Shown here: positions 50,055 to 50,523 of the stretch, piece by piece | How positions within the stretch are numbered: the first letter of the stretch is position 1 | How the letters are laid out: every line of letters begins with the position of its first letter | Source of the DNA: Corallochytrium limacisporum Hawaii | Taxonomy: Eukaryota; Protista; Pluriformea | Reading direction: 5' to 3' | Length of the DNA: 64,000 nucleotides | NCBI GenBank assembly: GCA_002811645.1 | Contig: PDIP01000010.1 | Span: 124,001 to 188,000, forward strand | The notes under the pieces: generated by a model | What the model saw: only the letters and a program-made list of their open reading frames with translations | Told to the model about the DNA's origin: nothing | The model's database searches: none | Program-made: the position numbers and the translations under genes

Positions 50055-50076
50055 AAAAAAAAAAGAAAAAAAAAAA
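50055..50076 (-). terminator. Pol III oligo(T) terminator of tRNA-Gly
   Basis: Two long A runs on + (T runs on -) starting 5 nt after the discriminator base. Confidence 0.8.
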
Positions 50077-50081
50077 GGGTG

Positions 50082-50198
50082 TGCGCCGACCGGGATTCCC
50101 GTTCAATGTCAGTACCAAATTTTGGCTTTCACGGTTGAGTTTCGAACCCGGGTCACCTGCTTGGAAGGCAGGGATGTTAACCACTACACTATCGGCGC
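50082..50198 (-). tRNA. tRNA-Gly: tRNA-Gly(TCC) with a 45-nt T-loop intron (50096-50140) at position 59/60
   Basis: Acceptor GCGCCGA/TCGGCGC+A; D stem GTGT/ACAT with AGTGGTTA loop; anticodon stem CCTGC/GCAGG, loop CT-TCC-AA; variable TGAC; T stem CCGGG/CCCGG with loop TTCGAA^T after removing 45 nt (72-nt mature body). Confidence 0.95.
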
Positions 50199-50226
50199 GG
50201 CGCTAATGGAAATGGCCGAAAAAGTG

Positions 50227-50235
50227 ATATATATA
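50227..50235 (-). promoter_or_regulatory. TATA-like element about 30 nt upstream of tRNA-Gly
   Basis: ATATATATA at about -29 to -37 from the tRNA 5' end, a position typical of TBP/TFIIIB binding. Confidence 0.5.
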
Positions 50236-50523
50236 CTCCCCGTGATATGGACATCTTGCGTGAGCCAAGGCAGCAGGCTGGTGAAGAGGGACCGGGGCCG
50301 GGGCACTCACCCTGGTCGTCGCAAGCAATGCTTCCACTTGTGCTTCAAGGGTGCTTGTGGGTGGCGGTCAATATGGCAAACGTGACGATTCTGGTGACGT
50401 TTGGTATCCTGCCAAAACTATTTATCGAATGGATTACATATTAGCTCCGGTGGTATTGATCGGAGTTGTGGAAGGCTAGAGTTATTCAACGGCCTTTTTC
50501 GGGAGGATGAAAGTCTCGAGCAC

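What the first reader, a model, noticed from the sequence alone, without database searches (positions are those of the whole stretch)
50082..50198. Nuclear tRNA-Gly(TCC) with an archaeal-style BHB intron in the T-loop (59/60)
Seen in sequence: the minus strand reads ...CCGGG TTCG AA^A CTCAA...TTGAA CGGG AA^T CCCGG TCGGCGC A. This folds as T-stem (CCGGG/CCCGG), 3-nt bulge AAT, 4-bp helix TTCG/CGGG (two G-U), 3-nt bulge AAA, then intron stem TCAA/TTGA after one C-A mismatch. Established: BHB motifs are cut after the second nucleotide of each bulge. Applying that rule removes exactly 50096-50140 (45 nt) and restores a 7-nt T-loop (TTCGAAT) in a fully paired 72-nt tRNA-Gly. Eukaryotic nuclear tRNA introns are normally at 37/38 and are located by TSEN from the mature domain; ectopic BHB introns are known from archaea and a few algae such as Cyanidioschyzon. 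Inference: this apparently holozoan genome uses BHB-guided, position-independent tRNA splicing and may hide further ectopic-intron, permuted or split tRNAs that standard scans miss.
Basis: partly seen in the sequence, partly recalled or inferred. Interest (0 to 1): 0.95.

Follow-up and report, generated by a model that had tools for sequence, protein, structure and literature searches.

The report
Archaeal-style tRNA introns in animal relative
A single-celled close relative of animals (Corallochytrium limacisporum) carries its only nuclear glycine, cysteine and several other tRNA genes split by archaeal-style introns in the T-loop, plus a gene with its halves in swapped order, although the animal/fungal type of tRNA-splicing enzyme it encodes is described as unable to cut at such positions.

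Summary
Confirmed and extended. Removing window 50096-50140 gives a perfect 72-nt tRNA-Gly(TCC). The genome is Corallochytrium limacisporum (Holozoa; TSEN34 identical to EukProt Clim_evm39s119). This is the only nuclear Gly-TCC gene found; no Gly-CCC was found.

Nine loci (Gly-TCC, Gly-GCC x2, Cys, Ser-CGA, Arg-ACG, Leu-CAA, Leu-TAA, Sec) have a 23-57-nt intron at 59/60. All show a 4-bp helix and two 3-nt bulges (36/36 cells paired, one compensatory change; chance about 6e-13), in otherwise unrelated introns. Initiator Met has a strict BHB intron at 43/44. Ala-CGC is circularly permuted. The genome encodes TSEN2, TSEN34, TSEN54, a weak TSEN15 candidate and RtcB.

Most likely TSEN cuts the BHB directly and RtcB ligates. 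This is inferred: no RNA read shows splicing, and this locus has the weakest BHB of the nine. The architecture is known from archaea and red algae; I found no report from Opisthokonta, and a 2023 review says their enzyme type cuts only at 37/38. First-stage notes of this scan had flagged several sister loci in this genome.

The parts
50217..50237 (-). Upstream TATA + T-tract element (TATATA-N4-TTTTTC), probable external Pol III promoter / start region
   Evidence: Occurs once in the 64-kb window, here. Precedes most nuclear tRNA genes held (a loose form in 31 of 32 scored) and the 5S genes, at variable distance. Function inferred.
50141..50198 (-). 5' exon of tRNA-Gly(TCC), positions 1-59 (A box 50191-50181, anticodon TCC 50165-50163)
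   Evidence: Rfam RF00005 positions 8-63 match 50191-50135
50143..50146 (-). BHB central helix, exon strand (T54-G57, TTCG)
50140..50142 (-). 5' bulge AA^A (5' splice site after 50141)
   Evidence: BHB rule (established knowledge; PMC3978253, PMC4090602)
50096..50140 (-). 45-nt intron at 59/60, with an internal hairpin; its first bases keep a B-box-like GGTTCGAAAC in the gene
50098..50101 (-). BHB central helix, intron strand (CGGG; two G-U pairs)
   Evidence: sister genes have CGAA, CGGA or TGAA here
50095..50097 (-). 3' bulge AA^T (3' splice site before 50095)
50082..50095 (-). 3' exon, positions 60-73 (T-stem 3' strand, acceptor 3' strand, A73); CCA not encoded
50055..50076 (-). Pol III terminator: T11, C, T10, starting 6 nt after A73
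   Evidence: direct sequence

Best explanation
This is a functional, single-copy nuclear tRNA-Gly(UCC) gene of Corallochytrium limacisporum with a protein-spliced intron at 59/60. Shown in sequence: promoter element, exons, BHB geometry, terminator, and no other nuclear decoder found for GGA/GGG. Inferred steps: (1) Pol III transcribes it from the upstream TATA element to the T-run. (2) The T-arm of the precursor folds as T-stem / 4-bp helix (T54-R57 paired with the intron's 3' end) / two 3-nt bulges. (3) The TSEN2 and TSEN34 active sites cut after the second base of each bulge, reading the local BHB as archaeal EndA does, without the TSEN54 ruler measurement, which a T-arm interrupted by an intron cannot supply. 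(4) RtcB joins the halves and restores a 7-nt T-loop. The same BHB-reading mode serves eight isoacceptors at 59/60, initiator Met at 43/44 (this intron first, since its outer helix uses the last four bases of the 37/38 intron), and the circularisation step of the permuted Ala-CGC precursor. The 37/38 introns have relaxed junctions and probably use the ordinary mature-domain mode.
For: Perfect mature tRNA after excision. Nine loci with the same register: central helix 36/36 paired (32 WC) against 5-28/36 when slid; intron stem 24/27 against 6-14/27. Joint chance about 6e-13 over eight independent genes, with introns unrelated except the two Gly-GCC paralogues. Compensatory change G57-C to A57-U in Arg-ACG. 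Eight of nine spliced products are called by ARAGORN. All three nuclear Gly genes and the only Cys, Sec, Arg-ACG, Leu-CAA, Ser-CGA and iMet genes found are interrupted. GGA+GGG make up 258 of 749 Gly codons in the window's genes. iMet 43/44: helix 4/4 WC, intron stem 5/5. TSEN34 (E 3e-26), TSEN2 (2e-22) and TSEN54 (4e-13) match the human subunits, with the Tyr-His-Lys triads visible in the alignments; RtcB E 3e-163. Eukaryotic endonuclease can splice BHB-type substrates in vitro (PMC4090602).
Against: There is no RNA evidence: the two RNA-type runs cover only the flanking mRNAs. This locus has the weakest helix of the nine (two G-U pairs, C-A mismatch next to the bulge). ViennaRNA gives its register about 1%, and 1-3% also for Gly-GCC(C4), Arg-ACG and Sec, while it is the MFE in the other five. 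The assembly is incomplete (83% BUSCO, PMC5560861; some N stretches), so an intact copy could be missing. A 2023 review states the four-subunit TSEN cannot cut outside 37/38 (PMC10485636).
Confidence: 0.82

Rival explanations
1. The intron is spliced, but not by the whole four-subunit TSEN: a TSEN2/TSEN34 sub-complex or another BHB-reading nuclease does it, or the cuts lie 1-3 nt away from 59/60.
For: A catalytic-dimer model was proposed for C. merolae ectopic introns (PMC3728597). The TSEN15 candidate is weak. The junction can slide 3 nt here.
Against: Only two EndA-family catalytic genes were found in the genome. The junction cannot slide in five of the nine loci, and the BHB register is the same in all nine.
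Confidence: 0.09
2. Insertion-killed pseudogene; the working Gly-TCC gene lies in an assembly gap.
For: Short D- or T-arm insertions in eukaryotic tRNA genes usually mark pseudogenes (PMC4090602). The assembly is a draft.
Against: The exons show no decay (7/7 acceptor, 5/5 T-stem); promoter and terminator are intact. The same gap would have to hide intact Gly-GCC, Cys, Sec, Arg-ACG, Leu-CAA, Ser-CGA and iMet genes, and random insertions would not give the same BHB at nine loci.
Confidence: 0.05
3. The insert is never removed; the tRNA works with an extended T-arm.
For: MFE folds keep the acceptor stem with the insert as a long hairpin.
Against: The D/T-loop elbow (G18-Psi55, G19-C56) would be lost, because T54-G57 pair with the insert (established tRNA structure). 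The inserts vary from 23 to 57 nt, yet keep exactly the cleavage geometry.
Confidence: 0.03
4. Assembly artefact, or an archaeal / red-algal contaminant contig.
For: The same T-arm pattern is common in tRNAs that look archaeal in metagenomes.
Against: The locus lies between eukaryotic genes covered by RNA-type contigs of the same species. It has the same upstream element as the intact tRNA genes and a poly-T terminator. The nine loci lie on eight different contigs, and read-derived contigs hold the insert.
Confidence: 0.01

Closest known systems
Archaeal non-canonical BHB tRNA introns (59/60 in Thermoproteales and others; T-arm intron of Lokiarchaeota tRNA-Sec)
   Same: Position 59/60, 4-bp helix from T54-R57, two 3-nt bulges, sequence-unrelated introns (PMC4090602; PMC5330540). 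The same pattern retrieves many archaeal-looking Gly, Asp and Arg genes from metagenomes.
   Different: Nuclear Pol III gene with poly-T terminator; host enzyme is eukaryotic TSEN2/34/54, not a symmetric EndA.
Cyanidioschyzon merolae (and Chondrus, cryptophyte/chlorarachniophyte nucleomorph) disrupted nuclear tRNA genes
   Same: Small genome with mostly single-copy tRNA genes, ectopic BHB introns, multi-intron genes with ordered splicing, permuted genes, upstream TATA, and Sen2/Sen34/Sen54 (PMC3728597, PMC3978253, PMC13578239).
   Different: The host is a holozoan (Amorphea), not an alga. Ectopic sites concentrate at 59/60 as true introns (nine loci). A TSEN15-like gene may be present, whereas none was found in C. 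merolae.
Circularly permuted tRNA genes (types I-V; algae and Thermofilum)
   Same: Ala-CGC at contig C242: 3' part, then a 26-nt spacer, then the 5' part and a T-run. Leader and trailer form an HBh' motif at the D-loop junction (15/16, like O. tauri type V, or 16/17).
   Different: None is listed from any opisthokont in the reviews read (PMC3978253 Table 1).
Human/yeast four-subunit TSEN with canonical 37/38 introns
   Same: Orthologous TSEN2, TSEN34 and TSEN54, an RtcB ligase, and eight isoacceptors with relaxed 37/38 introns.
   Different: Described as limited to 37/38 (PMC10485636); here 10 of 45 isoacceptors found need cuts elsewhere.

Membership tests
BHB-type tRNA intron at a non-canonical position | Excision restores a complete cloverleaf tRNA | tested here: met
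   72-nt tRNA-Gly(TCC), ARAGORN
BHB-type tRNA intron at a non-canonical position | 4-bp central helix flanked by two 3-nt bulges on opposite strands, splice sites after the second bulge base | tested here: met
   4/4 paired (2 G-U) here; 36/36 across nine loci, slid controls far lower
BHB-type tRNA intron at a non-canonical position | Flanking helices h and h' (strict hBHBh') | tested here: inconclusive
   T-stem 5/5. The intron-side helix starts after a C-A mismatch at this locus (relaxed form). It is strict in Gly-GCC, Cys, Ser-CGA, Leu-CAA, Leu-TAA and Sec, and weak in Arg-ACG.
BHB-type tRNA intron at a non-canonical position | BHB is the favoured fold of the precursor | tested here: inconclusive
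   3.2 kcal/mol above MFE here; equal to MFE in 5 of 9 loci
BHB-type tRNA intron at a non-canonical position | Removal by tRNA splicing endonuclease and ligase in vivo | not testable with these tools
   Enzymes present; no small-RNA reads available
Canonical eukaryotic tRNA intron | Position 37/38 | tested here: not met
   Anticodon loop is uninterrupted; the insert is in the T-loop
Four-subunit (alpha-beta-gamma-delta) TSEN | Distinct TSEN2, TSEN34 and TSEN54 orthologues with catalytic triads | tested here: met
Four-subunit (alpha-beta-gamma-delta) TSEN | TSEN15 subunit | tested here: inconclusive
   C154 ORF: Pfam Sen15 E 0.009, below cut-off; human TSEN15 E 1.7; ESM Atlas best hits all Sen15 at 0.81, a lead only; no homologues at 50% clustering; single-sequence fold uninformative
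Circularly permuted tRNA gene (sister locus Ala-CGC) | 3' half upstream of 5' half in one unit, BHB-like junction between leader and trailer, no intact copy | tested here: met
   joined product scores 123.5 in ARAGORN; no other Ala-CGC seen (for part of the genome, 28)
Circularly permuted tRNA gene (sister locus Ala-CGC) | Circular RNA intermediate | not testable with these tools
   needs inverse RT-PCR
Self-splicing group I/II or spliceosomal intron | Ribozyme core, or GT-AG ends | tested here: not met
   45 nt, ends A...AA, no Rfam intron match

The most novel reading that the evidence does not exclude
A complete animal-type four-subunit TSEN (2/34/54/15) in a holozoan works in two modes: ruler mode for relaxed 37/38 introns, and mature-domain-independent BHB mode for essential T-loop and variable-region introns and for circularising permuted pre-tRNAs. 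Ectopic introns and permuted genes would then be open to Opisthokonta in general and missed by eukaryotic tRNA scans. An unidentified eukaryote in metagenomes with the same 59/60 Gly intron hints at wider spread.
Probability: 0.5. Interest if true: 0.88.

Novelty: new member of a known kind. Interest (0 to 1): 0.8.

Why it matters
Current reviews tie the restriction of tRNA introns to 37/38 to the four-subunit TSEN of animals, fungi and amoebozoans, and treat ectopic and permuted genes as a matter of archaea and algae. They name the link between TSEN architecture and intron position as an open question (PMC10485636). A holozoan in which all glycine, cysteine, selenocysteine and initiator decoding appears to depend on cuts outside 37/38 breaks that link and gives natural substrates and an orthologue of the human enzyme (a disease gene set) to test it. 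Corallochytrium grows in culture and has been transfected (from memory, not checked here). The finding also shows that standard eukaryotic tRNA annotation misses about a fifth of this organism's isoacceptors.

Tried and rejected
ARAGORN and Rfam on the raw window miss the gene. BLAST-type search of the own genome finds only the locus itself and is too insensitive to count paralogues. The Rfam genome list is incomplete (it missed intact Val-CAC), so absence was re-tested with patterns. Ile-TAT and Gly-CCC were not found. Intron-to-intron similarity is absent beyond the two Gly-GCC paralogues, so recent transposition of one intron is not supported. B-box rebuilding by the intron's first bases holds in only 5 of 9 loci, so it is not a requirement. 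The AlphaFold model of the TSEN15 candidate was unusable (pLDDT 35). The metagenome scan found no Corallochytrium relative with the gene; two marine metagenomes hold short reads beside the intron only. Joined (spliced) sequences were built only inside scripts from stored files and scored with ARAGORN.

Full report
Observation. Removing 50096-50140 gives a 72-nt tRNA-Gly(TCC) with fully paired acceptor, D, anticodon and T stems that ARAGORN accepts. The unspliced gene is missed by ARAGORN and scores below the Rfam cut-off. A TATA plus T-tract element lies at 50237-50217, the only one of its kind in the window, and a T11-C-T10 run starts 6 nt after A73. The gene sits between an AAA-ATPase gene and a radical-SAM gene, both covered by RNA-type contigs of the species. 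Read-derived contigs of the source sample hold 98% and 93% of the sampled words of the stretch, so the insert is not an assembly error (same sample).

Organism. The genome has 24,109,830 bases in 286 contigs and is almost intronless. Its TSEN34 is 100% identical to EukProt Clim_evm39s119, and Corallochytrium limacisporum is reported at 24.1 Mb with 0.0 introns per kb (PMC5560861). The host is therefore a holozoan.

Is there an intact copy? An Rfam search of the genome and two pattern searches (D-loop to T-loop with a YMY anticodon; Gly-type D-arm to anticodon) return only this locus and the mitochondrial Gly-TCC. No Gly-CCC was found. GGA and GGG are 258 of 749 Gly codons in the window's genes. 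The draft assembly leaves a small chance of a hidden copy.

The pattern is genome-wide. Using truncated Rfam hits and the upstream element, which precedes most nuclear tRNA genes, I found the same T-loop interruption in Gly-GCC (contigs C4, C88), Cys-GCA (C44), Ser-CGA (C33), Arg-ACG (C273), Leu-CAA (C15), Sec (C110) and Leu-TAA (C238). The introns are 23-57 nt and unrelated, except the two Gly-GCC paralogues. In all nine loci T54-R57 pair with four intron bases that end two nucleotides before the 3' splice site: 36 of 36 cells pair (32 Watson-Crick), against 5-28 when the partner is slid. The first three intron-stem pairs are 24 of 27, against 6-14. The joint chance from intron composition is about 6e-13. 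Arg-ACG, which has A57, has U opposite it, where the G57 genes have C. Eight of nine spliced products are called as tRNAs. Leu-TAA fails because of acceptor mismatches. A wider pattern found no further 59/60 genes.

Other disrupted genes. Initiator Met (C22:166404-166564, minus) has a 31-nt 37/38 intron and a 57-nt intron at 43/44 with a strict BHB (helix 4/4, intron stem 5/5). Its outer helix is formed by the last four bases of the first intron, which implies ordered removal. Ala-CGC (C242, about 178108-178011, minus) is circularly permuted: upstream element, 3' part from the D-loop to A73, a 26-nt spacer, the 5' part, then a T-run. Leader and trailer pair as helix-bulge-helix at 15/16 (4 bp + 5 bp, giving a standard 72-nt tRNA) or at 16/17. 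It is the only genome-wide hit for that T-arm-then-A-box order. By contrast, the seven other isoacceptors with 37/38 introns have imperfect central helices in six cases and weak intron stems. Strict BHBs thus mark the ectopic sites, and relaxed junctions the canonical ones. Of 45 nuclear isoacceptors found, 10 need a cut outside 37/38.

Machinery. There are two EndA-family catalytic genes, matching human TSEN34 (E 3e-26) and TSEN2 (E 2e-22), with the Tyr-His-Lys triads present in the alignments. TSEN54 matches the human subunit at E 4e-13, and RtcB is intact. A TSEN15 candidate on C154 has only weak support: Pfam E 0.009, human TSEN15 E 1.7, ESM Atlas look-alikes all Sen15 at 0.81, no other homologue.

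Mechanism. Shown: the anatomy, the conserved geometry, the absence of intact copies in this assembly, and the presence of the enzymes. Inferred: Pol III transcription from the upstream element (needed for the permuted gene, and for the four of nine loci where the intron spoils the B box); BHB recognition and double cut by TSEN2/TSEN34 without the mature-domain ruler; ligation by RtcB. Eukaryotic endonuclease is known to cut BHB substrates in vitro (PMC4090602), so the capacity may be latent. Against: no RNA data show the junction. This locus also has the weakest motif: its BHB fold lies 3.2 kcal/mol above the MFE and has about 1% pair probability, whereas it is the MFE in five sister loci. The junction here can slide by 3 nt.

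Comparison with what is known. Introns at 59/60 with a BHB are standard in some archaea. Ectopic or permuted nuclear genes are known from C. merolae, Chondrus, prasinophytes and nucleomorphs (PMC4090602, PMC3978253, PMC3728597, PMC13578239). My metagenome scan returned dozens of archaeal-looking genes with the same T-arm pattern. The element is therefore a new member of a known kind. What is new is the host: searches of the held literature found no report for Corallochytrium or any opisthokont (subscription papers are not covered). A 2023 review states that the four-subunit TSEN of Amorphea can remove only 37/38 introns, and that tRNAscan is reliable for animals, fungi and amoebozoans for that reason (PMC10485636). 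One metagenomic eukaryote with spliceosomal introns, which I could not place (RPL18 about 80% to early fungi and green algae alike), has a Gly-GCC gene with the same 59/60 BHB; its helix strand differs between strains (CGAA against CGAG) while keeping the pair.

Earlier notes of this scan. First-stage readers had flagged Ser-CGA, Leu-CAA, iMet and a permuted gene in other windows of this genome. I had found Ser-CGA, Leu-CAA and both permuted loci before looking; the iMet note gave a lead that I then tested. These notes are not independent evidence. Joined sequences were used only in local scripts; no search with a spliced model was run.

Verdict. The feature is real and very probably a functional BHB intron (about 0.9 that it is spliced). 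It is one part of a genome-wide set of disrupted tRNA genes in a close relative of animals. Interest 0.8: known architecture, unexpected lineage and enzyme type, directly testable.

Noticed in passing
L082 (G000:C242:178011-178108, minus): Circularly permuted tRNA-Ala(CGC) with D-loop junction and 26-nt spacer; the only Ala-CGC found; I found no report of a permuted tRNA in an opisthokont.
   Followed up: yes
L093 (G000:C22:166404-166564, minus): Initiator tRNA-Met with introns at 37/38 and 43/44; the second has a strict BHB whose outer helix uses the end of the first intron.
   Followed up: yes
L046 (Thr-CGT, C257), L054 (Ser-TGA, C11), L042 (Ser-AGA, C21), L073/L098 (Leu-TAA, C238); L102, L103: Four single-copy nuclear tRNA genes have mismatches at acceptor positions 1-2 (also 4 in Leu-TAA). 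The genome encodes a true Thg1 (C223) and a separate Thg1-like protein (C3) closest to bacterial/archaeal repair enzymes, with a basic N-terminus. Candidate 5' editing of cytosolic tRNAs.
   Followed up: partly
L074 (G000:C173:7690-8190, plus): Second permuted tRNA-like gene: long hairpin leader, 3' half with a 6-bp T-stem and G73, 82-nt spacer, 5' half with a 64-nt D-loop insert. Anticodon unresolved; the best BHB register gives TTC. Its D-stem-to-anticodon stretch resembles the mitochondrial UGA-reading tRNA.
   Followed up: partly
L116:5310-5430, L130, L224, L225 (JGI/ENA metagenome contigs): Unidentified eukaryote (spliceosomal introns, RPL18-RPB7 neighbourhood) with tRNA-Gly(GCC) carrying a 59/60 BHB intron.
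   Followed up: partly
L099 (G000:C110:371719-371862, plus): tRNA-Sec with a 56-nt 59/60 intron; a T-arm intron in tRNA-Sec was reported for Lokiarchaeota (PMC5330540).
   Followed up: yes
window 50217-50237 and genome-wide: Conserved upstream TATATA-N4-TTTTTC element before most tRNA and 5S genes, at variable distance (up to about 100 nt), implying long 5' leaders; second genes of tandem pairs lack it (dicistronic transcripts likely).
   Followed up: partly
L098 (Leu-TAA intron): The intron contains a T6 run, which would stop Pol III in many eukaryotes; terminators here are mostly longer.
   Followed up: no
genome-wide: No Ile-TAT or Gly-CCC gene was found although ATA and GGG codons are used.
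   Followed up: partly
L232 (G000:C143:118880-118950, minus): Partial tandem repeat of the 3' two thirds of tRNA-Asp with its terminator, right after the intact gene (duplication or assembly artefact).
   Followed up: no
L061 (C177:176800-177140), L063 (C182:200430-200780), L053 (C11:248530-248900): Further loci with the same upstream element followed by structured GC-rich RNA-like sequence; probably other Pol III RNAs, not identified.
   Followed up: no
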